Assembly: GCA_964187785.1 (NCBI GenBank)
Contig: CAXLNC010001431.1
Span: 498,934 to 560,000, forward strand
Length of the DNA stretch: 61,067 nt
Direction of reading: 5' to 3'
Source: Amphiscolops sp. MND2022
Lineage: Eukaryota
Part shown: positions 9,911 to 58,378 of the stretch, piece after piece
How the letters are laid out: the number at the start of each line of letters is the position of its first letter
Numbering within the stretch: the first letter of the stretch is position 1
Made by a program: the position numbers and the translations under genes
The notes under the pieces: generated by a model
What the model was told of the DNA's origin: nothing
The model's input: the letters and a program-made list of their open reading frames with translations, nothing else
The model's database searches: none

Positions 9911-10167
9911 ATGTCAGCACAATGGATACATTTTTCTCTCAGTTCATGTTCGACCCACCGTGAAGGGTACACGTTATACCATGTAACCGGATACAGACAG
10001 CAAATTGCATGCAACAGTCTGAAAAACATCAGCCCTGTGCAAAAGTTCACTTCGATGACTAGGTATCGCAAAATGTTGGAACTGCGAGAAGCGATTCTTT
10101 TGGAATGTGGTGAAGAATCCTTTATTACCGATCTCCCTGGTTTGAGGAAACCCACTGCTCTACGAAG
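9911..10167 (+). CDS. RPS6KC1: RPS6KC1-like exon 1 (PX domain, N-terminal part)
   Basis: MSAQWIHFSLSSCSTHREGYTLYHVTG...TRYRKMLELREAIL...LPGLRKPTALR. Ends AG|GT, phase 2. Confidence 0.8.
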
Positions 10168-13100
10168 GTTCTCGGCTCTTTTCTGTTTTTTTAACCCACC
10201 ACCCAAGATTTTTTTTGAAAAAAAAATGTGAAAAGATTAAAATAAAAAGAACTGAACTAAACTGGAAACCTTCACTTTTATATTTTTCCTCAGGATGACA
10301 GTTTAGAATTCAGATGCAAACTTGTTCACGCTATTTTGTCTTTGAAGTCACTCATTTTTGTTCAAGAAATCAGCGGCTTCCTGTTTTGAGTCACAAAAAG
10401 CAGTTAAAACAAATTTAATATTAGTCAAAATGCGTGGAAAATGTTTTGTTCGATTAATAAACTATTCTAATAGAAGTTTACTTACTGTTATTTTCACGCA
10501 TTTTGAATATAATTATGTTCGTACTAACTGTTTTTTCGTGACTTAAAACGTGAAGTCGTTGAATTTCTCGTGAATGCGCAAAGAAAAATAGTGTAAACAA
10601 AGTTTGTATCTCAATTCTAAATTGTCACCCTGGAAATAAACATAAAACAGAAGGTTTCCGGACTGTAATCAAGTCTTTTTGTTATATTATTTTCACTAAT
10701 TTTCAAAAAAAAATTGTGGTGGGGGGAAAACAGAAAAGAGGCAGGTTCTCCAGCAACGAAGTGACTCACCGACAACAGAGCATCGAATGTTTCTTCAGTT
10801 TCCTGGAAATCATAAATTCGCCCGTTTTGACCTCCGTTCTTGATGATTTCTTCAACATTGACACGCACAATCAACCTAGTATCGAAAATAGCATGGAACA
10901 TAATGGAAGCTTTCCTGTACATGAGAACCCAATGGAATCCAGTTCTACTGGGGTTTTCGCAACAACTGGAGTGTCTGATGCAAACTTTAATGATTTAATG
11001 GATGATTCCTCTAAAGTACAAATTGAGGCTGTTTCGCACAGAGCTATACATTCCAATCTACTTTCTCCTGATTGCTTCAGAGCATCCTGCGACTCGCTTT
11101 CATTGTCATCTAGGTATGGCGTCTGTTGTAGTCATTTGCAAAGCGACATTCAAAATTGCCAAACCAATTAGATTAAAAATCAAGTTTTCTAAATAGACAT
11201 TCAAAATTCCCAAATCGACATTCAATTTTAGTAATCTCCCAGCAGCAATTCGAAGCAGCTTTTTCATTCTTTCTACCTCTCTAGTGGCATGATTGTAGCA
11301 TATGCTAATTTTGAAGGTCTATTCTGTTAAATTTAATTGTCCTATTTTTTGGAAGTAACGAATTGGAATCAAGATTGATAAAACAGACTGATTTTCGAAA
11401 ACAAATTTGAATGTGGTATTGCAAATTTTCAACGTCCTACACTGTATATATTTCTATAGATTGTTTTCAGGGTCAAACAAGCCGGGAACGGCATAAGTCG
11501 GCGCCATTAGGCTCAAAAAATAGCACAAGGACTTCAAAGTGTCAAAGTATTCTCTTCTACAGTACCCGAAAAAGTTGGCCCGAAACTATTTTAGTCGTCT
11601 TTCACTTCATGAAGCGCCGACTAAAATGGATGGTTTAGCCCAGAAAAAATTGTCTTGTTTTAATCAGCGCTTTATTGAAAATTTTCTATATTTGCTATAA
11701 AACTTGAATATAATGACCGTGTGCGTCAAAACCATGGACAATTCCCAATGCGTCGAACTTTCAAACAGGCGAAAGTCAAAAATCGATTTATAAACAATAC
11801 AAATTTTGTTCAGCGTGCAGTCTGATTGATTGAAATTTAAAATCAAATCAATTTCAACCAATTGAAAGGCTGGGCATTCAAAAAAGAAAACACTGTATTC
11901 CTTCATATAAAATATCTAAAATGTAAATAAATATATGGAGGGCAGTGTAAAACCGTATTACTAAAAAAATTAAAAATTTCAACCAGTGTATATTATACTG
12001 GCTGATATAGCACTAATTTGTAATTGCTCAAATTCTGGTCGTCGAGAAGGATTTGTAATTAGGGCTGTATGAAAAGTCACCGAAACCACGTGTCGGTAGC
12101 TTGCAAGTTTTATATGCCCGTATTAGAGAAGGCGAGTCGGTTAACATTTTTTGGTGTCGTTGCGCTGCAAGTTACAGGGCCTCCTTTGCAGTATCAGCGT
12201 TAATGCTCCCAGAAAATAGCTACACAGCGGAGAAAATTACTAGGTGAATCAAAATCAAGGAATACATTTCGAGATGTCTAAGTTTCAATTGTTTGTCGAT
12301 AAAGGTTTAACGACAGCTTTGATTGAACGCTGCTGTCAATTATTATTATTTCTGCGATAGCAGGAATAATATTGAAATCTGGTTTATTGGAATTTTTTCA
12401 GTTCAAATTTTGTCTGAATTAGTTTTGTTTGATTCCGAGGACCTACTGAAAAATTCAGATACTTTGTTCGGCAGCGAGGATAAGCGTGAGATTTAAATTT
12501 CTCAAGTTGCCGACAATTCGTTTGTCGTGCGATGGAACGAGCGAGTGGTAATTATGCTTTCATACGCCGAGTTATTGAGATAAAGCGAACGAGTGTTAAA
12601 TATTCGTTCGCCGAGAGCTTCGCCTGCATTCAAATGCGAAAGCGAAACTCCGTGTACGCTTAGTAGTTACATTTTCTTCAGTCCGAGAAGAAATCAAGGC
12701 GGTGTCTTCTTTTCAACATGAAAGCCTAAAAGCAGAAATACTGTGCCCCACGGGGCCTTTTTTTTAAATAGGCAACTTCTTTTGAAGCGATAATATTTTC
12801 ACCCATCAAAATGAGAACGAAATGACTGGTAGCGGTGTCCATATTTTTCTGATTGTTCGAATATTCCTTAGTTGAAGATGTGATTACTTAACAAAAATAC
12901 AATTCTAAATAATTGACAGAAAATTTCAGTCAGTTTTATGTACAAATCATACGACTTCAAAGGCGCAAATTTTAATGTGCTCCGTTTTTTTTGGTTCACT
13001 TTGTAGTCGCTGATTTTTGAGAGCTGAAAATAACATATAATCCTAATTTTTGCACAATTTTGTTAAATTAGAAAATAGCCTCAGAATATGAATCAGTTTT

Positions 13101-16100
13101 TATTGGACCTTTTTGGTTTCAGATCCGACCATTTTTACGAAAGCTATGATGAAGACGAACTTTTTGACCATTTTCGGTCGTTTCTGTGTTTGAGGTGAAA
13201 TTGCTCGAAACTGGTTTCAACTGTTACCATTCCAATGCCAGGTTTCTGTAGCTCAGGTTTCCGTCCATCAAGTTTCCATATGAAGTTGTTGCTGAAAATC
13301 AACTCTGTAAGAAATGCTCAAACATTTGCCTGCTGTAGCCAATCTTAATACGTGGGGCGAGAGAACACGTTCCATTTTTGTCGAATTTCTCTTAGGTTGT
13401 TGATTTTCATCTAACATGTCATGTGGAAACTTAATAGAAGAGAACCAAAACTACAGAAACCTGGCATTGGAATGGTAGTCGCTGAAACCAGTTCAGTCCC
13501 GAGAAGTTTCACCCCAACCACAAAAATGACCGAAAATGGTCAAAAATTTGGTCTTAATTACTTTTGTAAAAATGATCGGATCTAAAAGCAAGAAGTTCCT
13601 GTCCTATAAAGACTGCTTCGAACTCTAAGGCGACGACTTCAGTTTTACAAAATCGGTGCCTAGTGAAATAGCATCGACGGTCACTTTGGTTGCCTAGAGT
13701 GCAGTTCTGAGATTTTTCTACATGTTTTCAACTCGAACAACTTTGACTTGTATAACAGTTCAACAACTACCATCATTCAGTTTTGGAATTGCAAACAAGT
13801 GAACCTCTGTCATTGTTTGAGTAGTTTGAGTAAACTCTTATTTCAAATTCAATGTCATGGTATATTTGTAGATCAGATCGACAGATTTTATCGCTCGGTA
13901 GAATGTGTTCACATCATTCCGAAGCATTCGTTTGCCGCCCGTTTGATTTTCCGTGTGCTTATCATTGTCAATAGTCAGGGTTGGCTGTTTTGAAACATTG
14001 TTTAAAAACATGCGGTATAAAAAACGTTTTAAAACATTACAACCTCTTGAAAGTGACTGTTTTTAGTCGGCGCTTTTCTTTAGAAAAGAGCGACAATAGT
14101 CATGGCTTTTCGTCAGTTTTTCGATACAAAATCATTTGAAGCCAAGGGGTCCCTTTGGATTTTTTTCGGTGTTGTGAGACCTTATTCTTTTTGCACATGA
14201 CGAAGTCAATGTGCATTGCAGTCCAGCTAAGAAAGTTTTTTTTTTCCACAGTAGCCAACTTCATAATAAGCCCCTTTTAGAGAAAAGCCAAAACCCCAGA
14301 GAGATTCGAACCTGCAGCCTCCCGATTGCGCGGCATAAGTGTTAACCACTGTGCCATAAGGACGTTATTGAATAAAGTTGAACTGTTGAATATATATACG
14401 CATGCGAATAAAATAATATATATACGCATATTAAAATAATCGTTGTCTTCGTCATGTGTTGCGAAGCACCGCTTCGCCTCTGTGTTCAACTTAACCGAAC
14501 AGCTCTTTTAATCTCAGTACTTTATCATACTTTGAGGGCCCGTTTCAGTGAACTACATCAGAAAACTAAAGAAAAACAATAGAAAACAAAAACGTGTGTT
14601 TTTTATGAAAATCTGTTTGTTTGATTAATATGATAAAAACTGTTTTTGCCAACCCTGTCAATAGTTGATGTTTCAGTTCTTCCGTGGCTGATTTATCGTC
14701 TGAAACGGCCTCTTCCGCAAGCACCGGTTTCGAATCGCTGTCCTGCTGTGACGAGAACAGTTTTCTGTTTGGAAACACAGTCCTTGCTCGCGATTGGCTG
14801 CAAGCTGCTTTGATCGAAGTCACCTTCATTTCACCCTCTTCAAGTTAGCCCCTAAATTGCATTTTAAAGGTTTTTAAGGTTTCAAGTAGAGGTGCTGCAC
14901 CGGACAAGAAAATTTCCGTCTGGCCGGACAACATAACTGAGCCGCCGGATACCTGCCGGACCGGACATTATCCTCGACTATAAGCTATAAAAGACTCTTT
15001 TCAGAATTGGGCAATGAATATGACGGAAAGCAAAGTAAACGCTTGCTCCAAAAAGTGAGAAAAATTATTCCGTTTTTTATTCAACATCGAAATACCTGAA
15101 ACTTATGACTGTCGTCGAGAAATGAATGTTGAAACATGGCTATAAAAGCATCAGTCTCGATTTTAATCTAAGATACGCGATCATTTGCTCAGATATTCGT
15201 CCAGCCGGATTCCGTCAAAAGTTCACCTCTAGCTTCAAGATTTTTTAAGTTGTTTGAAGGATTTTACACTGAGTTTTGACACCGCTAATCAACGATTTAG
15301 CGAATTAGCGGCCGCACAGAAATTTTTAAGCGAATTTATTTGCAATTCAAATTAGCGGCGGCCACTAATAAGTTGTCCAAATTCAAAATTTTCTCGGAAA
15401 ATACGCGGAGTGTCGAAATGAATTTCGAAAAATGCCAACTCTTGTAAAACTCACACAGTATGAGAAATTTTTTTCAAAAATTGAATCAAGTTATCGTTGG
15501 ATTTTGAAAATAATTGAATTCAAACATTTAAAAGGTTGAAGTGAACGTTTTTCAGCGAAATGGCAACTTTGAAGATAGCGGTTTGAACTGATTTTAATGA
15601 AATTTCCGCATTTTATGAATATATTCACTCGTCAGTGGAAAGATGAATACCTTCAGATTAATTTTACTGGAGCTGAACCTTGGGATTTTATTTTATTTCA
15701 GAGAAATACCTGATTGAAAATAGGGAAAACCTTTTCGACAAATTTGAAAAACCTGTGACTCAATTGTCCTACTCAATGCCTTCCGAATAAAGGACAAAAA
15801 ACATTTGATGTGTAGAACCAAAAATTGCCATTTTTCTTCGTTTTGAGTTCCTGACCGGAAAACTGCCATTGCAGCTTTTCACTCATCTCAAGAGTAAGTT
15901 TCACAAATTTGTCCTCTGTCGTTTTCTACTTTATTTCTTCGCTTTTGGCATGATTCTAAAGTTAACAATTTCAATAGACTTTTATTCGAGCTGATGTATT
16001 GAGATATTAAATCTCTTTCGTAGTTATGCGTTCTGAACGATCATTTTCCCCAGTATTTCATTTCCTTTCGAATTAATCTTGATCGAAGATCGTGATGTGT

Positions 16101-19100
16101 ATATTGAATCAGTTTTACGCAATTAATTTTGATTGAATTATCTGTTGAAGTACAGTACGATTAAGAAAACATCTCCCGGGCGATTTTAGGCTCGATTTTC
16201 TCGTAATCAATTGACAATTTACAATGCAAGAGTCAACACTGTGACTTATTACCGCCAAAATATAGACCAAAAAATTTACATTTTCCACTAGAGAATCCAA
16301 AGCTCACTTTTCGGACGCGCGAAGTGGCCCGTAACAAAGAAATCGCCGAAAAAAGTAGTTTGATTGAAGAAACAAAAACAAATGAAGACAGAAGATTTAA
16401 CGACAATTGACGGTCTACTAAGTGAATTAAAAAACGGAATACAGAAATATTTCCCTCTTCAAAATCGTAATATTTGTAAACAAGGCACTAAAAATCTTTC
16501 ACTTTCTCTGTCAATCATCTCATTACGTAATCAAATCTTCAACAATGAATGATTCGAACCTTCAGAAAACGTCTACTAAGTGAACCGAATAGAACAGAAC
16601 GCACAGAAGTATTTCACTCTTCAAAAACGTACAAATTGTCAGCAAGACACTGAAAAATTTCCACTTTCTCTGTCAATCATCTCATACGTGTAAGGACTAC
16701 TGTCCCTGGGTACTCTTAGGTCACCATTAGACCGTGAGTCCTTTTTTGTAATTTTATTTCTAAACCCATTGTTCACTTCAGCGTTCTCCTGACTATTAGG
16801 GGACGAACTAACCTCAGTGTCTCGATTCCCTGAGGATGAATTCGAACTCACTATATTTTGGATCTCTGGAATTACTCTCTCGGCTATTGCCGTGTTAATT
16901 GCCCTGTTTATCTGACTAGGCATTAATGACATCATTGAATCCATTTCTTGCGAAAGTCTCATGTTGAATTCGCTAGTGAAGGTTTCCAGTGTCTCTTGAA
17001 CCCTATCTTGCCTATGAACTGCATTTCCATGGACGTAATGTCCAAATTCGTTTTCATGAGATTCATACCGTGCAGATTGGGGATTGGACTCAATGTCTTG
17101 ATTGTTTTCCACATTCCCAATCATGTTTGAAAGTTCGCGTTCAATAGGATTAGTGTTCTCATTCCATATCATTACGTCCATATTTTGAAAGTCAGACATC
17201 ATGTCCATTTCCCTTGACTTCCTAGCTTTCGCCTTTTGCTTTCCTGTGGAAGGCAAAAGAGACAATTGCAAGAGGTAAGAATTGATTATCTTTAGGCTTG
17301 CAAAACAAAATCAATTGATAGGCAGCAGAGAATATAAAGTTGTGTCCCCCGGTCCAGAAGTCCCGGGTATATATAGGACAGCTTGCATGACTATCAGGAA
17401 AATAACCGTTATTTTCTAAAAATAAATAATCACTCGTGTAAAAATAGCATTACCTATTTATAGGTTACATGGCGTAATGACCTACTGGTCACATCAAAGG
17501 CGTCACACCGCCACTCCCATCTATTTCAACTAGCGTCCTCGAAGGACAACTGCACTTTCATGATCATGGTAGCAACCCTGCATGTATCATTCATATAATC
17601 ATTACATGTTTTGAGCATTCCTGTGTGTATTTCAGGCACGAGAGTTTGGACTTGGCCTAATACGGCTTTTGAGCCAAACGGGGGGGGTGATCAATTGTAG
17701 CACCCTTATTTGTAAGAATATAATTGTATGCATCATTATTCTTCAAGTTAAGTCTATTACTACAACAATGAAAGCACCAGTTAATTTGGACTCAGTGTCC
17801 CATTGCCTTAACAAGTACATCAATATTTGAAAGTATGCGGCGCGTGGCCATAATGTCCACTAATAAGAGCACTGTATTACATAGGTTCGAGAAAGAAAAT
17901 CGCCAGATTTAAGGTTTATAGAGACCACAGTTGCAGCGTTCCCGCAAGTAACAGTAGGCAAATGCCCTGCTTTATCGATGGAGGTAGAGAATTTAGAATA
18001 AAGGATCTCGTTTTTCAGAATGCTCTTTATTTGACTTAGTCCGTGATCAGACAAGTGTATCTGATCCTTCCGGAGAAGATTGATATTAATCTTATGCGCG
18101 ATCCCGCGAAATATCCACTTGCGGGACTTTGCTTTATCGCTAAGAATACGATTAACAGCAGCAGTTCGCTCGGGTTGAGGGAATCGGGGAGTAAGCCCAA
18201 TGATAACCACTTTGTCTGCTAATGCCACCAAACGGTCTGCAACGTCAATCGGCGATGATTCGTTGTTTCCGTTTTTGTCGAACAAGCAATTGGCACCAAT
18301 GAATAAAACCACTACCTTGAATTGACCTGTGGTGGGCAGAAAACCAATGACGTTCCAAGTTTCCCCCAGGTATCGTAAGAATATTGAAATTCGGGAAGGA
18401 AAGCTGCGAAGTCTGAAAGTTAGCGATTAGTAGGTTGGCTGCTGTGGACGGCTTTAATGTGTGAAATCACATTCGATTACGTTGAATAAAATTGTTGTGT
18501 AGAAAACAGGCTTTTAGGATGAAGCTTTTATTCAACGTAGTCTGAAAATGGAAATACAATTAGTTAGAGTTAGTCATGGTCAATAAGTTAGTAATAGACA
18601 GACAATGGCCATAGTCATTATATAACACATAGCTAGGCTTTTGCATTGACCAAACGTCAACGTCAAGGGCTATCGATCAAACTATCAATAATGTTGCCGT
18701 AGACGAATAAATGTTTCCTTTGTCGTGACATAGTTCTAATAAAGTATAAATCACAAATATTGAAAGTGTAATGTTCGAAAGTGACCCTGGTATGGTTTCA
18801 TTTTTATTGATGAATGGATCCATGTTGAAACTAAAATAGTCGGACTATTACAGTCACTTTCCCGTCAAGACTCACACGCGTGTAAATAAAATAGATAAGG
18901 CAGCCCATGTGGGATTTGGAGGTTGGCCTAGTGGTTACAGCGCTGACTTCCCAAGCCGCGAGAGTGGGTTCGATTCCCGCAACCATCTAATTTGTTTCAC
19001 CAATCCAGTGATGTACGAAATCAAAGGGTCCTCCTTCGTTTATTAAATGGATTTCAATGCGTTTTTTCTCCAATGTGGTTGTCGTCAAAGTGCGTTTTTT

Positions 19101-22100
19101 TAAATCATTCCCAAAAAGTTTCACCAATTAGGGCTTTCTTGAAGTTTTCCATTGTGTATTTTTCCGCCCTCTGAGATTTTGACAATTTTTCCATGGACAA
19201 TCTGGACCATAATAACAGACTTTGCGTTTTTTCAGTCCTGAGCGGGTGACAACTTAAGGGTTCTTGTCTTGTTTACTTCTCAAACTGATGAAATAGTATT
19301 GACTTTATTAGCTCGTTCCTATTCCTTCAATGTAAGGTTGTTAATAGTAGTTTTTTCACGGAAAATGTTTTAAACAGGTTCTTAAACAAAATATACTGTT
19401 TTTTGTTGTATTTTATTGTTTTTTCTCTCTTGGGGAAAACTATCGTGGAAAACAATGTGTTATGCACAACGGTTTTCCATTTGTTGCCAAATATTTCATT
19501 GTACAAAAATATAACAAGGATATATATAACGGGGATATATAAAAGAATATAAACCATGAAAGTCATTCACTTCACTGAATTTTTCCAGATATCTTTCACA
19601 CGAGACTTTTCTGATCTGAAAAACCTTAAAAGTACCAATCAAATTGAACAGTCACTCAGAAACTAGATCATAAACAACTAACTGTAAAGAAGTGTCTGAA
19701 AAAAAAACAGGAAAAGCAGTGTCTTTTTAAAATTGTTTCATGTTTTTTCTTGTGTTTTAATAAAACATGAATGTTGACAAGCAATAAGATTAAAAGCAAA
19801 TAGAAATCAATCTCTCGATGACCGCAAAAATTCGAGAATGTTCTAGAAAATATTTGAATATTCGAATACGAAAAAGGCCTTGCTACGAAATATTGTTTAC
19901 TAATATTTGTTATTTGTTGCTTAATTTATGTTCATTTAGCCGTCTGAAATGTACCATTCTAATCTTTTGCTGTTTATATTTTTGCCTCGAATCTTGATGA
20001 AATTCTGTACGAATTTGGCCTTCAAAACTGGGAATCTAATACATTGTTCCTCTCCATCAACTTTTACAAAACGATCTATAGAAACGGCGACAAATTCTAT
20101 AGTTATTTCAATGAATAAAACAACTTAACCACCTTGCTTCAAAGCGTTTGTTTTGCAGAGCCCTCCGAGGATTCTTCGAACAAGAGGGGTACTTCGAACA
20201 AGTACGCAGGCATGTCGGGTCTGTTGGGGAAGTTCTCCTCATCATCATCATCATCGCATTCCAAGAACTCTTATCTGGAACAAGCCGCCCATTACGTCAA
20301 ACTTGCCAACGAGTATGAAAACTGTGCCCAATACGAAGGTCAACACGCCGCAGCCAATGCTCAATAGAAACACGTGATATGTATATATGCTGGCTGTCTA
20401 ACCGCACTTCAGCCCCCCGCACTTTTTGCGGGCTGCGGGCTAATTAAAAATTTTTGGCATAAAAATGGGATCTCTTTCACTATGTCCCCCCAAAATCCCG
20501 ACTCAGCCAATCAGAAGCGTTGTTAAATAAGAGCAGATCTGCGTTATTAGAATGTGCAATACATGTATTTAATAGTGTTTCACTTTGTCCCCTCTTTTTG
20601 TTGTAGGGGGGGGGGGGTGAGATAGTGACATAGATTCGAGAATTTAAGTTGCATCTGAAACTCTTTCATAATTCGTTTCATAATTTTTGACTGAGTGGAA
20701 ACTTGGAAAATCAAGATGACTTTTCGAAACAACCTTTAATACTGTTTGATAATGGATTGGACTTTTACATGTTGGGCTTGAAATACAAATTAAACTATCG
20801 AAAGTTTTTCCTTCAAAGGGAAATCACACAGTTGGCTTTTTAAAGAATAATTGTTCATCTCAGTAGATTTCAAGTGAAACAAGACGCCCGCTAAGCACCG
20901 GGATATTTTCCGCGACACGCTTATTGCAAAAAAAGTATGGCGAAGGAGAGGATCGAACCCACCACCTACTGGCTGGGAAACACGAAAAAATTTCAAGCAC
21001 AAGCCCGGGTTCGAACCCACGACCCACTGGCTGGGAAAGCAATAAGTGAAGTGCACTTCACTCCATGGAGTGGGTATAAAGTGAAGTTTTGGCAGAATTT
21101 GTTAAAAAAACGCGTCACAGATCATGATTTTCCTCCCCCATTTATTTTGGCGGAAAATAACAAAAAGTAAACTTGTCGAGTAAAATTCTGGTTAAATAGT
21201 CAGTTTAAAAGATCAGTCAAATGTAATATTGCCTTGTACCATTTTTTCCCCAAAAATGTATAGCATATTGAGAATGATAGCAGGAACGACGGAGAAAAGA
21301 GAAATATTTGTGAATAATATTTCGAGATAGTAAATGTACTTTTGAATAATATGCAACAAAGTTCAATTTTTTCCATTTTCCGAAATACCAAATATTTGAC
21401 GGCATCGGCAGTCGAACCCGTGATCCCATGATCGGACGGCTACCGCACATCCTCTCATCCAAATTGCCGTATCATCGAGGGGTCCGAATTTAATCTTATT
21501 CTTATTTGCTTCGCAAGAATTCTATTGAGCATTGTCCCGCCCGCGCAGGTGCTTTCCACTCCTACAAAAGCTGCATCGAGATTCTGTTGCGAGGCGTGGC
21601 CAACGAAACAGATGGTGAGAAACGGGCAGCTGTGAGCGAACAAGTGACTGAGTACATCACAATCGCTTCTCAGATCCTCCTGAACTTCATCCAAACCGAT
21701 GCCGACCCCAGTCTGTGGTTGCAGGAATCCATCAGCAAGAGCTTCTCGGAGCTTGCCATGCCCTGCGAAGAACTCAAGTTTTTCACTATCCTCAGGGTGC
21801 GGCCGGCGGGCTTGAATTGAAATTCATTAAATATTGGACACCTAAGCTTCTAATAGATGCACCGCGCGCATCGAAACTAGGGATGTACCGGAATACGTTT
21901 TTGAGTTCCGGCCGGAGCCGGACCGGAACTTTGATTGTGCTATCCTACATTTACGTAACATATTTTTTGCTTTGTATCGATTGCTTTATATGCGATTTCT
22001 CAGAATTCGGAAACATATATGAAGAAAAAAGAAGCAGACCTCTTCCAGAAACTGGCGAAAAACTTTTATTTCTTCACCATAATCTGAAATTGTTTTAGTC

Positions 22101-25100
22101 AATTGTATCAAATTATGAAACAATTTAGAACAATTTGGAAACAATGCTGTTTTTAAGATAATTTTGTTCCGGCCGGAACCGGAACGTTTTTGAAATCCGG
22201 CCGGACCGGAATTCCGGTACATCCCTAATCGAAACCAAAAAGGGCGATGATTTTCAAATATGCAGCCCGTATTAAGGGGGCTGGTTAGCAAATAGACGTG
22301 TATGGTGTCGATACGCTGCAAGCTGCAGAGCCTTCTTTCAGTGTCAATAAGGTTCCCAAAAAATTAACATCGAAATCTTAGCAAGTGAAAAAATTAATTG
22401 TCATTTTTAGAACAGTTATATTGTAATGAATACCTTTCCAAGAAAAAAATCCTGGTTCCGTCTCTTTCAGTTTGGGCTTCATGGTATCTTCGTGGATGCA
22501 GTACGCAAGGTGCCTATAAGCGCGAAACGTGAACCTCTACAGGAAATAAATTAGGCTGTAAATTTTCATTTAAACTTTTCAAGATCTTATCGATGACATT
22601 CGTTTTGTTCTCAGTTTCAAAAAATATTCAGTAGTATGTATATACTTTTGTCGAAATCTTTCGTTGTTTTCAATTCTAAAAAGGACGATTCCTCATTTGC
22701 AATAGCGTATAGTCTACTTGAAAATAAAGGCCTCGAAGATAATAAACCTGGAACGTCATAAGTGGACGCCCGCTTAAGGTTCAAAGAGAGGAAAACTACT
22801 TCAAATCTTTGTTGAGAAAACTCAATTTAATAGTCTTGAAAAACCTAAAAAGGGAGCCTCTGGACCTAAAAATTCTTTTTATCTCACCAGAAAAAGTAAC
22901 AGCGCTTTTTCCAGTTTTATCACCAGAAATATCAAAAAGCCATAGCGAGAACCCTTTTGCGAAATGAAAATCAACCCCCCCCCCCAAAAAAAGGACGAAC
23001 AGTGTTAAAACAAAACATAAAAGCGGCCCTTCAGGCTTCAAAAACGCTTCTTCCTATCTAAAAGAATTAAATCGACCTTTGGTTTGTAATTTGCATGAAA
23101 TTCATTTTCGTATAACTTTTTTGGTCAGTTCGTGTGGATTAAAAAACCACAAGTCACTATAAAGGTCGCGTTTTATTTTCAGAAAAAAAGCGCCGACTAA
23201 AAACAAGACATTCTCTCTGAAACGTGGGCTAGACCATCCATTTTCCTGCTTTTTTGTCTCTGTCCTTACAGCATAGGCAGTACATTCAAGAACAGATAGT
23301 CTTGAAAATGTGTTAAACATTAAGATATTTTTCCACGATTAAAGTGTTGACATTCTATCAATTTCTAAGCCCGCTCAAGGTTCTCTCGCAAAATATGGTA
23401 GTCCGAGACAAAGACGGGGAAATCTACTTTCTCAAAGTTATCCGCAAACCTTTAGAGGGCTCTTACAACTTCAGGAATGTTCCCTTGTCAGTGAAACACA
23501 TGGCGAGGATTGTGAAATTCTACGACCTACCTAGCTGCTATGTTTTCTGCATTGAGTATTTGGGACAGAATATTGGTTTCGATTATCAAAATAATTGGAA
23601 GAATTCTCTTCAAACGACGCCAGACTTAACCCGAATCTTCAACACTTTCGAAAACAACGATAGCAGCAAATTCCATGACGATGAAACGCTGGGTTCTGAT
23701 TTGAATGGTTTTGTGGAATGCCCTGAAAAAGAACAACTGCCAGTGGTACGAGATCGATTTTTCGTTCAAAATGCGGCCGTGAACAAAGATTCAACTGAAA
23801 TGGAATCTGTTTTGAGCGATTTGGAAGAAAGTCTTTCGAATTCTTTCGGACAAACATTAACCGATGAAAGAATGAAAGAAACCCTGAGGCGTAAAATCAA
23901 GGAGGCCAAATTGGAATTTTCTCGTAACTCCGATTCTTCTCAGAACATTACTCATTTCCGGCCCATATCCGGTGGAGTCGCTAATCTTGATTGCTTTGAT
24001 GCGACCCCGGTTGTTGAAACTTCGAAAAACCTTTCAAACGATTCTCTCAAAACTTCTGGTACATTCAGTGATGATCAACATTATGACCTAAACAAACTAT
24101 TTTAGTTGCAGTGAAACCGAATTAAGTTGATTAAATTATTCTACAAGTTTTGATTTTTTTTCTGATATTTTGCCTTTTTTCAGAACGTTTTTTACTCACG
24201 TTTGAAGTAATTTTATGATTAAGAAAATTTTCGAATCAAAATGAATATTTCAACAATTTTTCCATCAATTGTTGGACCTATACAGTTAATGTCATTGAGT
24301 CATTTGGCGGTGTTTTTAATCATGTGTTAACTCTAAATGGACGATGAAATTTTTGACTCCATCCAAAAATCTGGTGCTTAAACTTTCAACCGCAATATCT
24401 TCTAAACTTTTCGAGTCCGACAAACGATTTATAGCGCGTTGGAAGGCAATCAGGGCTTTCAAATGGATTTTTGATCTACTGGACTAAACACTAGCACCGG
24501 ACTTTGCGCCAAAGCATTGCACACCTCGTTTCTCTGGCTGCTTTCCAGCATGTTTCAAAACATGCTGCGACCCAACCTCGATACCAGTGGGATAAAGTGG
24601 CCACAAACAGAAACTGAAAAAAAAACGAAAATATGCAGTTTTTTTTCAATTTTTGGTCCCGTTCTCTCGATTTCTGAGACATCAAGTCAATATTTCGTAA
24701 AAAGGCGTGCAATGCTGTAATATCTGCTACGTCTGAAAATCTTACTCAAGTGTTTTCTTTACCATAAGGTCAGCTGGTGCCTTCAGAAGTTTGTAGAAAC
24801 CAATAGGTACGAAATCGTGCCATCGTCCATTCAGGGTTAAAGATACAAAATGAAGAAAATACCCGATAAAGTATAAGCGATATAGTTGCAACCCCCAAAA
24901 AATCCTTATGAAATTCTTTCATTCAAAGTTTAAGATTATCACTGCTTGCTTTTCAAGATTCCTCCTGCATTCCGCGGATTCAAGATCTTCAGAGGATTAT
25001 TCTTCAGATGATCGACTGCTTCCAAGAACTGCATGATCTCAATCTTTTCTGGGGAACTTTCACCCCCAGTAACTTGACCTTCGAACGTCGTGACGTCATC

Positions 25101-56405: not shown

Positions 56406-56803
56406 TACCAGCACTCAGTGGTTTTCTCCAATTTTCGATTTTTCTCCTTTTTGCTCAATTATAAGGGGTCGGATTTTCAATTTTTGATCCATTTGTTTTC
56501 CCCGCCGTCTTTTTCCACGTGAAATGACACGAAAAGCAAAGGAATCTAATCCTCACTCTCTTATTCCTGGCTATCCTGGTTTTGATGACTAACACAGGTT
56601 ATAAACAATTTGCTGCATTGTTCGCTTTTGGAAGCATTTGGGAATTCGGGACATTTTATGGAAGAAACCTTCTTTTACACCTGGTTAATATGTTCTAAAT
56701 CTTTCACGCTTTTCTGTTCAAAATCATTCTCTGTTTTTCATATGTTGTAAATTTTCGTGGTCTCATTTGTATTGTTATCTGCTGTGGTACTTCTACTTTT
56801 TGA

Positions 56804-57190
56804 GGCTCTTTTCTGTTTTTCCAAAAATTTTTGAAGTATATTTTCTTAAACATTTCAGACTAGTCTAATTAAAAGTAATTTTTTCCATAACATCAAGTAA
56901 ACTTCTATAGAATAGTTTATTGTTTGAAGAAAATATTTTTCACGCATTTTGACTATAATTATGTTCGAATTAAGTGTTTTTTGTGACTCAAAACAGGAAG
57001 CTGTTGATTTTTCTATCGAGAATGCGTGACTTAATTGGTAAAATAGAGTGAACAAAATTTGCATCTCATTTCTAAACGGTCCCCTGGAAATAAATTCAAA
57101 ATTGAAGGTTTCTGGACTGTGTGTTTTTTTTGTTATAATATTTTCACTAATTTTTCACAAAAAATGGTGGTGAGGGGAACAGAAAAGAGC
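56804..57190. mobile_element. Second, internally deleted copy of the intron-1 foldback transposon family
   Basis: Same termini (GGCTCTTTTTCTG / CAGAAAAGAGC), arm homology to 10490-10742, spacer in opposite orientation, own 8-bp duplication CTTTTTGA at 56796-56803 and 57191-57198. Confidence 0.85.
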
Positions 57191-58378
57191 CTTTTTGACC
57201 ACCATTCACCAGTTTTGTATTTCGTGTTAATTCTGTGGACTTGCCAAGTACATTTTTTCAGATTTATTGCATGAAGTTGTTTGTGAACGTCGTTTCCGTT
57301 GGTCTATTCGGGTTTAACCGAAACTTCGGTGAAGTACATTTCATTCAAAGCACTTTTTTGAATTTCAAAATAGCCTTTTTTAAACAATCAGATTAAGGAA
57401 AAATTGAATGAAAATCCATCGGAACAACTTTGAATCTTTGTTAGAATTTCTAGAGTGTATGATTGAATTTTCTACGTAGGAGCCTTTAGCAAAGACGTCA
57501 TAGCTTTAGTAAGTATTTCACATTTTATATAGCTTGAAAATACAGAAAAAAAGCAAAAAGAGGTACTTGACAATAAACTAATGACCCTGGAGTTGTATCC
57601 ATTTTTTAAATATTTTGCATGCAAATTCACAAAAACCAATGGCCCGAAAATCCTGTCTAGAATTTTTGAAGAATTGCCTTGCGCCTATTTTCATCGCAAA
57701 TTGAGCGACACTTAACTAACTTCTGTGATCATTTCACCTCATTTTTGTTAACATTGGTACGAAGTTCTACAAAGTTCTGTGAACCAAAAAAGACTAATTT
57801 GAGAATTTTGGAAGTTTTATGAATTCAATTGGAACCATTTTTGAGATGTATATCACCCTTTGTCTCAAAGGTACCCAGAAGCAGTTATCAAAGAAACCGT
57901 TATCTGTACAACAATTCGACGAAATCACACAACTATTCAAATGGCCATGTAATTACAGAGCCAACAAAAACTTGTATATAAATGTATATACCACTGGACG
58001 TGTATAGAAAGTGTATATTCTGTATATAGTCTACATTATGTAAATACCAATTTTGGTGCTCCATAAATTCGGCCTCAATTCTTCATCTCGAGAAACTAAA
58101 TTCGGCATTGGATTGAATTTACGACACAGTTTTCGAGGAGTTGCCAATCTGAATGTTTATAACCAGACCTTTAAATGCTGGTTATTGTTGTTCACTTGTT
58201 ATTGGTTAATTTCTCTGGTTATGGTAAGTTTTTGATTCTTATTATTAAGACCTTGAAATATCAGGTAAACTCGATTTTTCATTCAAGAGGTAAATACGAG
58301 CTCACTGCGTTGATCTAAAAAAACGTTTCTGGAAAACTTAAAAAAGCTAAAGCTTAACTGTGCATTGTGATAGTTTGT

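What the first reader, a model, noticed from the sequence alone, without database searches (positions are those of the whole stretch)
20339..21548. Intron 4: perfect 15-bp terminal stem across 1.2 kb
CAATGCTCAATAGAA (20355-20369) is the exact reverse complement of TTCTATTGAGCATTG (21520-21534). It lies 16 nt from the donor and 14 nt from the acceptor. The donor GTCAAC and acceptor CCCGCCCGCGCAG are atypical, and the junction flanks read CGAAGGT / CGCAGGT, like a decayed duplication. A perfect 15-mer at both ends is very unlikely by chance.
Basis: seen in the sequence. Interest (0 to 1): 0.7.

Follow-up and report, generated by a model that had tools for sequence, protein, structure and literature searches.

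The report
Paired ends on a newly gained intron
A 1.2-kb intron that this marine worm's kinase gene gained, and that its relatives lack, has a perfect 15-base inverted repeat just inside each end; the repeat most likely arrived with the inserted DNA and would zip the intron shut in the RNA, but no RNA data exist to show that it helps splicing.

Summary
CAATGCTCAATAGAA (20355-20369) and its exact reverse complement (21520-21534) lie 16 nt inside the donor and 14 nt inside the acceptor of a phase-1 GT-AG intron in a MIT-domain/kinase gene.

- **Copy number:** these are the only two exact copies in the 1.07-Gb genome. The intron ends match no repeat family, so this is not a MITE terminus.
- **Gain:** the closest relative found reads straight through the site (…TACGAAG|GTGCTTT…) while keeping upstream introns. 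Three more distant single-ORF homologues and a vertebrate homologue also lack it. Intron 4 is therefore a lineage-specific insertion at an AAG|GT proto-splice site.
- **Later additions:** a foldback MITE, a young tRNA-SINE and an older SINE (about 14% from consensus) inserted afterwards.
- **Structure:** folding predicts the 15-bp stem with probability about 1 and a net gain of -10.9 kcal/mol. The donor (GTCAAC) and the C/G-rich acceptor are weaker than in the shared introns.

Best reading: the repeat is the inverted ends of the founding insert. Its outer CAATG fits the hAT motif YARNG, but there is no adjacent 8-bp duplication and no family. The stem is a by-product that may aid splicing.

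No RNA data exist, and two haplotypes are uninformative about selection.

The scan had already reported transposon-born introns with paired ends elsewhere in this genome.

The parts
20159..20338 (+). Exon 4, encoding the first half of the MIT domain (…AAHYVKLANEYENCAQYE + first base of the Gly codon)
   Evidence: Translation. It is colinear with P0007 and P0001. The acceptor …TTTTGCAG lies at 20157-58.
20339..21548 (+). Intron 4: phase 1, GT…AG, 1210 nt. It is lineage-specific and absent from all homologous loci recovered.
   Evidence: The spliced product …QYEGAFHSY… matches P0007 …EYEGAFHSY… without a gap. The empty site in L052 reads TACGAAG|GTGCTTT. Exon 5 residues 1-41 match MIT profile positions 23-63.
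20339..20354 (+). Donor GTCAAC plus a GC-rich 16-nt spacer before the left arm. The other haplotype reads GTCAAT.
20355..20369 (+). Left arm of the perfect 15-bp inverted repeat. Its outer end CAATG fits the hAT terminal motif YARNG.
   Evidence: The motif is taken from PMC3014272.
20467..20638 (.). Nested foldback MITE (about 1000 candidate copies, about 90% identity), with its own inverted ends
   Evidence: (I3)
20877..21164 (-). Nested young tRNA-derived SINE (thousands of candidate copies, about 94% identity)
21311..21516 (-). Nested older tRNA-derived SINE. Its head ends 3 nt from the right arm, and the left boundary may extend to about 21207. The copy is 13.8% from a rough consensus. Its last 37 nt are pyrimidine-rich, identical to the consensus, and hold candidate branch points.
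21520..21534 (+). Right arm of the inverted repeat. It contains a decoy AG at 21528-29.
21535..21548 (+). C/G-rich 14-nt spacer and acceptor (…GCGCAG; the other haplotypes read …GCGTAG). There is no A before the AG, so the branch point must lie in or upstream of the right arm.
21549..21796 (+). Exon 5, encoding the second half of the MIT domain and a linker

Best explanation
Intron 4 is a spliceosomal GT-AG intron that this lineage gained when foreign DNA was inserted at an AAG|GT proto-splice site inside the MIT-domain exon. The 15-bp perfect inverted repeat is a DNA-level feature of that insert: its inverted ends, of the kind a cut-and-paste (hAT-like) transposon carries. It did not evolve base by base as an RNA signal. 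In the pre-mRNA the two arms should pair and loop out about 1.15 kb, including three later repeat insertions. That would leave the weak donor and the acceptor, which lacks a pyrimidine tract, about 30 nt apart. The stem would also bury a decoy AG. The stem is therefore a by-product of how the intron was born, and it plausibly helps, or at least allows, correct splicing.

Shown: the repeat, its uniqueness, the absence of the intron in relatives, the proto-splice site, and the thermodynamic stem. Inferred: the transposon nature of the insert and any effect on splicing.
For: - **Non-random position.** A perfect, sharp-edged 15-bp inverted repeat lies 16 and 14 nt from the two intron ends.
- **Precedent in this window.** Most perfect inverted repeats of 15 bp or more in the window are transposon ends with equally sharp inner edges. 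One example is the hAT MITE at 21878-22227, with TAGGG… ends and a perfect 8-bp duplication ATCGAAAC.
- **hAT-like tip.** The outer end CAATG fits the hAT terminal motif YARNG (PMC3014272). A random 5-mer fits about 1 time in 64.
- **Absent in relatives.** The closest relative (L052) lacks the intron but keeps introns upstream, so it is not a retrocopy. It is also absent in P0001, P0006 and P0002, which are single ORFs across the site, and in a vertebrate homologue whose nearest intron lies 18 codons downstream. The window gene is the only homologue in its own genome.
- **Junctions.** The empty site reads TACGAAG|GTGCTTT. Seven of its bases align to both junctions.
- **Same gene, same process.** The intron at 10166-10750 is a clear transposon insertion whose 8-bp duplication AGGTTCTC supplies both splice sites. 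Intron 5 has a 7-of-8 duplication. Both are also absent in L052.
- **Predicted stem.** Pair probabilities are 0.75-1.0 in a fold of the whole intron. The net gain is -10.9 kcal/mol, and the left arm is mostly unpaired before the right arm is transcribed.
- **Weak splice signals.** They are weaker than in the shared introns.
Against: - **No family.** The 15-mer, with up to one mismatch, is not a repeat terminus. The intron's first 124 nt and its 235-nt unique middle have no other copy.
- **No adjacent duplication.** The 8 nt next to the arms (GCCGCAGC / TCCCGCCC) match at only 3 of 8 positions. The arms are separated from the putative splice-site duplication by 14 and 7 GC-rich bases that are not complementary.
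- **Weak junction duplication.** ACGAAGGT versus GCGCAGGT is 6 of 8, with 4 positions forced.
- **Age puzzle.** If the arms are as old as the nested SINE (13.8% from consensus), 30 intact sites would be expected only about 1% of the time under neutrality. That would need selection or a younger origin. I could not show which came first.
- **No RNA evidence** of splicing at all.
- **Possible interference.** Candidate branch-point A's lie in or just upstream of the right arm, so the stem could hinder splicing rather than help it.
Confidence: 0.5

Rival explanations
1. The stem is a selected splicing element. Whatever its origin, the 15-bp pairing is kept by purifying selection because it brings a weak donor and a weak acceptor together across an intron swollen by repeat insertions, and it hides decoy AGs.
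For: - The stem is predicted with probability about 1 and gains -10.9 kcal/mol.
- The donor is the weak GTCAAC, and the last 14 nt hold no pyrimidine tract and no A.
- The decoy AG at 21528-29 lies inside the arm.
- The nested SINE is 13.8% from consensus. If the arms are older than it, 30 intact sites have a probability of about 0.01.
- There are no variants in either arm in any of the several haplotypes sampled (the reference, the second haplotig and contigs from two read samples), while flanking unique intron sequence differs by 3-8%.
- There is experimental precedent for intron-bridging structures (PMC4691745).
Against: - Zero of 30 variable sites among haplotypes is expected about 40% of the time anyway.
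- It is not shown that the arms predate the SINE.
- A fully Watson-Crick, sharp-edged 15-mer looks like a DNA-level duplication rather than a stem built by point mutations.
- No orthologous intron exists in which to test covariation, and there is no RNA data.
- The stem may occlude the branch-point region.
Confidence: 0.2
2. The intron is a break-repair neointron, as described in Daphnia. A double-strand break at AAG|GT was repaired with unique filler DNA. The short direct repeat at the junctions and the 15-nt inverted copy are both by-products of error-prone end joining, for example templated snap-back synthesis. They are not transposon ends.
For: - The interior, outside the nested repeats, is single-copy.
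- No duplication lies next to the arms.
[quoted passage not shown] This is what is described for Daphnia neointrons, with repeats of 4-12 bp (PMC4202315).
- The arms are short, perfect and sharp-edged, as templated insertions are (this last comparison is from my own knowledge).
Against: - The arms are about 0.5 kb apart even after the nested repeats are removed. That is further than templated insertions usually copy.
- The direct repeat is not significant beyond AGGT.
- The same gene and genome show bona fide transposon-born introns.
- The CAATG tip fits hAT ends.
Confidence: 0.15
3. The intron is an older one that relatives lost, and a later unrelated transposon landed in it. The arms are the ends of that secondary insertion, and the closeness to the splice sites comes from deletions or chance.
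For: - L052 lacks three adjacent 3' introns (4, 5 and 6), the pattern expected from loss through a reverse-transcribed copy.
- Synonymous divergence from L052 is saturated, so there has been ample time.
Against: - Losses would be needed in at least three or four separate lineages, against one gain.
- Only 30 nt of intron lie outside the arms, too few for a pre-existing intron.
- The intron at 10166-10750, also missing in L052, is demonstrably a gain.
- There is no duplication and no family.
Confidence: 0.08
4. The match is chance or a neutral later mutation, with no link to the birth or function of the intron.
For: - By duplex energy, the intron ends are only at the 1.1 percentile of random pairs in this repeat-rich window.
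- One other family-less 15-bp inverted repeat lies in the same window, away from intron ends (11612/14061).
Against: A perfect 15-mer with both arms within about 35 nt of the two ends of one intron is expected about 1e-4 times per intron at the empirical rate, and about 1e-6 from shuffles (and my arithmetic).
Confidence: 0.07

Closest known systems
Introners: transposons that create introns, mostly elements with terminal inverted repeats (Gozashti et al., 10.1101/2022.06.06.494994 and PMC12130899)
   Same: The intron is absent in relatives. It inserted at an AG|GT site whose duplicated bases can supply both splice sites. It has inverted repeats near both ends. It sits in an aquatic organism, and a neighbouring intron of the same gene is a textbook case.
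   Different: Introners are defined as families with many similar copies, and this insert is single-copy. The inverted repeat is 14-16 nt inside the intron ends, not flush against a target duplication. No acoel case was found in the paper library.
hAT-superfamily non-autonomous elements (8-bp target duplication, YARNG ends; PMC3014272)
   Same: A short, perfect, sharp-edged terminal inverted repeat that begins CAATG. Active hAT MITEs occur in the same window (21878-22227).
   Different: The flanking 8-mers match at only 3 of 8 positions. There are no relatives in a 1.07-Gb genome, and no subterminal repeats were seen.
Daphnia neointrons made by double-strand-break repair (PMC4202315)
   Same: Unique filler sequence, a short direct repeat of the exon end at the far end of the intron, weak splice signals, and an aquatic invertebrate host.
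   Different: Terminal inverted repeats were not found in the text of that paper ('inverted repeat' occurs 0 times). No presence/absence polymorphism was seen here among the sampled haplotypes.
Structure-bridged introns: zebrafish (AC)m-(GT)n introns and yeast intron-end pairings (PMC4691745)
   Same: Complementary sequences at opposite boundaries of one intron, predicted to form a bridging helix that pairs the right splice sites. The acceptor region is poor in pyrimidines.
   Different: Here the pairing is a unique 15-mer, not a dinucleotide repeat. It is a single locus, and no functional data exist.
Euglenid nonconventional or intermediate introns (PMC4770533)
   Same: RNA secondary structure brings the intron ends together.
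   Different: Those introns have non-canonical borders and an unknown removal mechanism. This one has exact GT-AG borders that restore the reading frame.

Membership tests
U2-type spliceosomal GT-AG intron | GT and AG at borders whose removal restores the conserved reading frame | tested here: met
   Removing 20339-21548 gives …QYEGAFHSY…, colinear with P0007, P0001 and the MIT profile.
U2-type spliceosomal GT-AG intron | Spliced junction seen in RNA | not testable with these tools
   Only DNA-type contig runs hold the locus, and no RNA run was found.
hAT-superfamily transposon | Terminal inverted repeats ending in YARNG | tested here: met
   Perfect 15-bp arms whose outer end is CAATG. The motif is from PMC3014272.
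hAT-superfamily transposon | 8-bp target-site duplication directly flanking the inverted repeats | tested here: not met
   GCCGCAGC versus TCCCGCCC match at 3 of 8 positions. No duplication of 2-9 bp lies next to the arms.
hAT-superfamily transposon | Other copies or an autonomous partner with the same ends | tested here: not met
   The genome holds only the two arms. The hits with one mismatch are unrelated sequences or lie inside another repeat. The subterminal sequence is single-copy.
Introner family | Many similar copies forming introns in unrelated genes | tested here: not met
   The intron ends and the unique interior are single-copy. Only the nested MITE and SINEs are repeated.
Introner family | Intron absent at the orthologous site of relatives, with the insertion at a site that supplies the splice signals | tested here: met
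   The empty site in L052 is TACGAAG|GTGCTTT, and four further homologues lack the intron.
Introner family | Target-site duplication spanning both splice sites | tested here: inconclusive
   ACGAAGGT versus GCGCAGGT is 6 of 8, but AGGT is forced by splicing. The remaining positions match 2 of 4.
Break-repair neointron (Daphnia type) | [quoted passage not shown] | tested here: inconclusive
   A 6-of-7 repeat is present but is not significant. The filler is single-copy.
Structure-dependent (bridged) intron | Complementary segments at opposite boundaries that form a stable helix | tested here: met
   Pair probabilities are 0.75-1.0. The duplex alone is -20.4 kcal/mol, and the net gain is -10.9 kcal/mol.
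Structure-dependent (bridged) intron | The helix is required for correct splice-site pairing | not testable with these tools
   This needs RNA data or a minigene. The relatives have no orthologous intron in which to test covariation.

The most novel reading that the evidence does not exclude
In this acoel-like worm, introns born from inserted DNA depend on an end-to-end RNA clasp, inherited from the insert's inverted ends, to be recognised at all. The clasp stands in for a weak donor and a missing pyrimidine tract. It is then kept by selection while the rest of the intron decays and fills with repeats. This would be a structure-assisted route by which raw insertions become viable introns in an animal.
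Probability: 0.2. Interest if true: 0.75.

Novelty: new member of a known kind. Interest (0 to 1): 0.42.

Why it matters
How new spliceosomal introns arise, and how a raw insertion gets spliced well enough to survive, is a long-standing question. Animals supply few clear cases.

This locus gives a dated contrast within one gene. Shared introns have ordinary signals. Gained introns are absent from a relative, sit at AG|GT sites, have weak signals and have self-complementary ends.

If the clasp matters for splicing, it would link the structure of the inserted DNA to immediate intron function. If it does not, the locus is still a clean example of intron gain by insertion in an under-studied lineage. 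No paper on acoel introners was found in the library.

Tried and rejected
- **MITE or repeat-family terminus: rejected.** The 15-mer has only two exact copies genome-wide. The one-mismatch hits are unrelated, or lie inside a reverse-transcriptase-like repeat or a 1.15-kb tandem array.
- **Right arm as part of the neighbouring old SINE: rejected.** At least eight family copies end at …GCAAC, which corresponds to 21516, 3 nt before the arm.
- **A longer decayed foldback: rejected.** After the three nested repeats were removed, no complementarity extends beyond the 15 bp.
- **The outer 16 + 14 nt as former exon: rejected.** The spliced protein is gap-free against all homologues and the MIT profile.
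- **Tandem duplication of exon sequence as the source: no support.** Only GT, and CG plus AG, are shared with the adjacent exons.
- **Dating the arms against the old SINE through its target duplication: failed.** My first candidate (GAATAATAT) proved to lie inside the SINE, and the left boundary stayed unresolved.
- **Selection test from haplotypes: uninformative.** Zero of 30 sites vary, with P about 0.4.
- **RNA evidence: none.** No RNA run holds the locus.
- **Rfam: nothing in the intron**.
- **Atlas search:** gave only generic kinase clusters.
- **Direct similarity of the GC-rich spacers** (CGCCGCAG versus CGCCCGCGCAG): judged within chance for such a composition.
Full report
**Observation.** The window holds CAATGCTCAATAGAA at 20355-20369 and its exact reverse complement at 21520-21534. 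The surrounding gene is read on the + strand. Exon 4 (20159-20338) ends …GCCCAATACGAAG, and exon 5 (21549-21796) begins GTGCTTTCC…. Removing 20339-21548 (GT…AG, phase 1) yields …NEYENCAQYEGAFHSYKSCIEILL…. Exon 5 residues 1-41 match positions 23-63 of the Pfam MIT profile. The spliced sequence is colinear, without a gap, with every homologue recovered. The arms lie 16 nt inside the donor and 14 nt inside the acceptor.

**Is it more than chance?** The exact 15-mer occurs only twice in the 1.07-Gb genome, and both copies are here. The repeat is sharp-edged, with no complementarity beyond 15 bp on either side. Block shuffles of the window give 0.2 perfect inverted repeats of 15 bp or more within 3 kb. 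The real window has 8, most of them transposon ends. Even at that empirical rate, my arithmetic puts the chance that both arms fall within about 35 nt of the two ends of one intron at about 1e-4 per intron. By duplex energy alone the intron ends are less striking, at the 1.1 percentile of random 60-nt pairs. The repeat is not an assembly artefact. It is present in contigs of four public runs from two samples and in both haplotigs of another assembly.

**What is inside the intron.** Three repeats are nested in it:
- A foldback MITE at about 20467-20638, with about 1000 candidate copies at about 90% identity.
- A young tRNA-derived SINE at 20877-21164, with thousands of candidates at about 94% identity.
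- An older tRNA-derived SINE in antisense orientation, at 21311-21516 and possibly extending left to about 21207. It is 71-81% identical to other copies.

The head of the old SINE ends at 21516 in at least eight family members, so the right arm, 3 nt further on, is not part of it. The rest of the intron is single-copy: the first 124 nt have one weak partial hit and the 235-nt middle piece has none. The one-mismatch variants of the 15-mer are unrelated sequences, part of a reverse-transcriptase-like repeat, or part of a tandem array. None is an element terminus.

**The intron is lineage-specific.** A profile-free search with exon 5 found few homologues.
- **Closest relative.** P0007 shares 77-79% protein identity and 74-88% exon nucleotide identity. 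It is one uninterrupted 534-aa ORF on a 426-kb contig (L052) that reads …TACGAAGGTGCTTTT… across the site.
- **Not a retrocopy.** L052 keeps upstream introns at the same positions as the window gene. One is a roughly 260-nt intron with CAG|GTGTGT…TTTTTCAG at the position of the window's intron 3.
- **Other introns missing in L052.** It also lacks intron 5, the interruption before the last kinase exon, and the intron at 10166-10750.
- **More distant homologues.** P0001 and P0006 (single ORFs of 549 and 584 aa), P0002 (a 369-aa ORF spanning the site) and a vertebrate homologue all lack an intron here. The vertebrate's nearest intron lies 18 codons downstream.
- **Single copy at home.** The window gene is the only homologue in its own genome.

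One gain is far more parsimonious than three or four losses. Timing is loose, because synonymous divergence from L052 is saturated (dN 0.27).

**How it was probably made.** The empty site is a classic proto-splice site, AAG|GT. Seven bases of the relative's exon align to both junctions of the window intron (CGAAGGT and CGCAGGT). Since AGGT is forced by splicing, this is only weak evidence for a target duplication.

The same gene offers context. The intron at 10166-10750 is a transposon whose perfect 8-bp duplication AGGTTCTC supplies the GT and the AG. Intron 5 has CTCAGGGT / CTCAAGGT. Intron 5's 5' end is also single-copy.

Transposon ends in this window look like the arms do: short, perfect, and sharp on the inner side. 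The hAT MITE at 21878-22227 has TAGGG… ends and a perfect ATCGAAAC duplication. The outer end of the arms, CAATG, fits the hAT motif YARNG (PMC3014272).

Three things count against a canonical hAT insertion:
- The 8-mers next to the arms match at only 3 of 8 positions.
- The arms are separated from the splice junctions by 14-16 GC-rich, non-complementary bases.
- No relatives exist in the genome.

I therefore file the insert as transposon-like, with membership unproven. Break repair with filler DNA, as described for Daphnia neointrons (PMC4202315), is a live rival.

**What the repeat would do.** Folding the whole intron with 30-nt exon flanks places all 15 pairs in the minimum-energy structure, with probabilities of 0.75-1.0. 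Forbidding the right arm from pairing costs 10.9 kcal/mol. The left arm is mostly unpaired in the nascent RNA until the right arm appears.

The helix would loop out about 1.15 kb and leave the two splice sites about 30 nt apart. The donor GTCAAC (GTCAAT on the other haplotype) and the acceptor …CCCGCCCGCGCAG (…GCGTAG in the other haplotypes) are weaker than those of the shared introns, which have GTATGG and GTTAGC donors and T-rich …CAG acceptors.

The last 14 nt contain no A, so the branch point must lie in or upstream of the right arm. The pyrimidine-rich head of the old SINE (21480-21516) is identical to its family consensus over 37 nt, while the rest of the copy is about 19% diverged. It offers TTAAT and CTTAT motifs. 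A decoy AG at 21528-29 lies inside the arm, and another at 21516-17 lies just upstream; both would shift the frame. A helper role is thus plausible: pairing the sites and hiding a decoy. So is interference with branch-point use.

**Is the stem conserved?** The two haplotigs differ at 3.1% of intron positions, and at up to 7.8% in the first 128 nt, including an AGAA duplication abutting the left arm. No difference falls in either arm, and the read contigs of the second sample add none. Zero changes in 30 sites is expected about 40% of the time, so this is uninformative.

The old SINE copy is 13.8% from a rough consensus. If the arms are older than it, 30 intact sites have a probability of about 1%, which would argue for selection. 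I could not establish the order of events, because the SINE's left boundary and target duplication stayed unresolved. The whole insert could also have arrived already carrying these repeats.

No orthologous intron exists for a covariation test, and no RNA run holds the locus.

**Comparison and novelty.** The locus works like an introner-type or neointron gain with self-complementary ends. It resembles experimentally supported bridged introns (PMC4691745) only in geometry. It fails the defining family criterion of introners and the duplication criterion of hAT elements.

Earlier notes of this scan, made on other DNA of the same genome, already describe transposon-born introns with paired ends and 8-bp duplications. 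They disagree on whether the pairing guides splicing. My result agrees with the first point and leaves the second open. I found no paper on such introns in acoels.

**Verdict.** The intron is a real, lineage-specific gain. The 15-bp clasp most likely comes from the inserted DNA. Its function is untested. Interest is moderate.

Noticed in passing
window 21878-22227: A hAT-type MITE nested in intron 5. It has perfect 17-bp ends (TAGGGATGTACCGGAAT) and a perfect 8-bp target duplication (ATCGAAAC), which suggests a recent insertion.
   Followed up: partly
window 21480-21516: The last 37 nt of the old antisense SINE are pyrimidine-rich, hold branch-point-like motifs, and are identical to the family consensus. 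The rest of the copy is about 19% diverged. This stretch may have been co-opted as the branch-point and pyrimidine tract of intron 4.
   Followed up: partly
window 20160-21796 compared with L055: The two haplotigs differ by about 3% in the intron and about 1.6% in the flanking exons. The differences include a donor variant (GTCAAC/GTCAAT), an acceptor variant (CAG/TAG) and an AGAA duplication abutting the left arm. Heterozygosity is very high.
   Followed up: yes
window 11612-11626 and 14061-14075: A second family-less perfect 15-bp inverted repeat (AAGCGCCGACTAAAA), 2.4 kb apart inside the shared intron between 11117 and 14667. It is about 500-600 nt from either exon, so it is not terminal, and no flanking duplication is seen.
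   Followed up: no
window 14846-20158 compared with L052 9817-10077: Shared intron 3 is about 5.3 kb here, with the unusual donor GTTAGC. In the relative it is only about 260 nt, with GTGTGT. The intron has expanded strongly in this lineage.
   Followed up: partly
window 10166-10750 and 56803-57192: Two copies of one MITE family (ends …GGCTCTTTTCTGTT…). The first forms an intron whose 8-bp duplication AGGTTCTC supplies the GT and the AG. That intron is absent in the relative L052.
   Followed up: partly
G000:C6:72396559-72402292: A tandem array with a period of about 1.15 kb. Each unit carries CACTGCTCAATAGAA, a one-mismatch variant of the arm. It is unrelated to the intron.
   Followed up: no
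L052 14862-18029: The relative's contig carries an intact-looking 1055-aa LINE ORF (endonuclease plus reverse transcriptase) 3 kb downstream of the kinase gene.
   Followed up: no
window 23938-24986: The interruption before the last kinase exon (intron 6) is also absent from the relative's single ORF. I did not define its exact borders.
   Followed up: no
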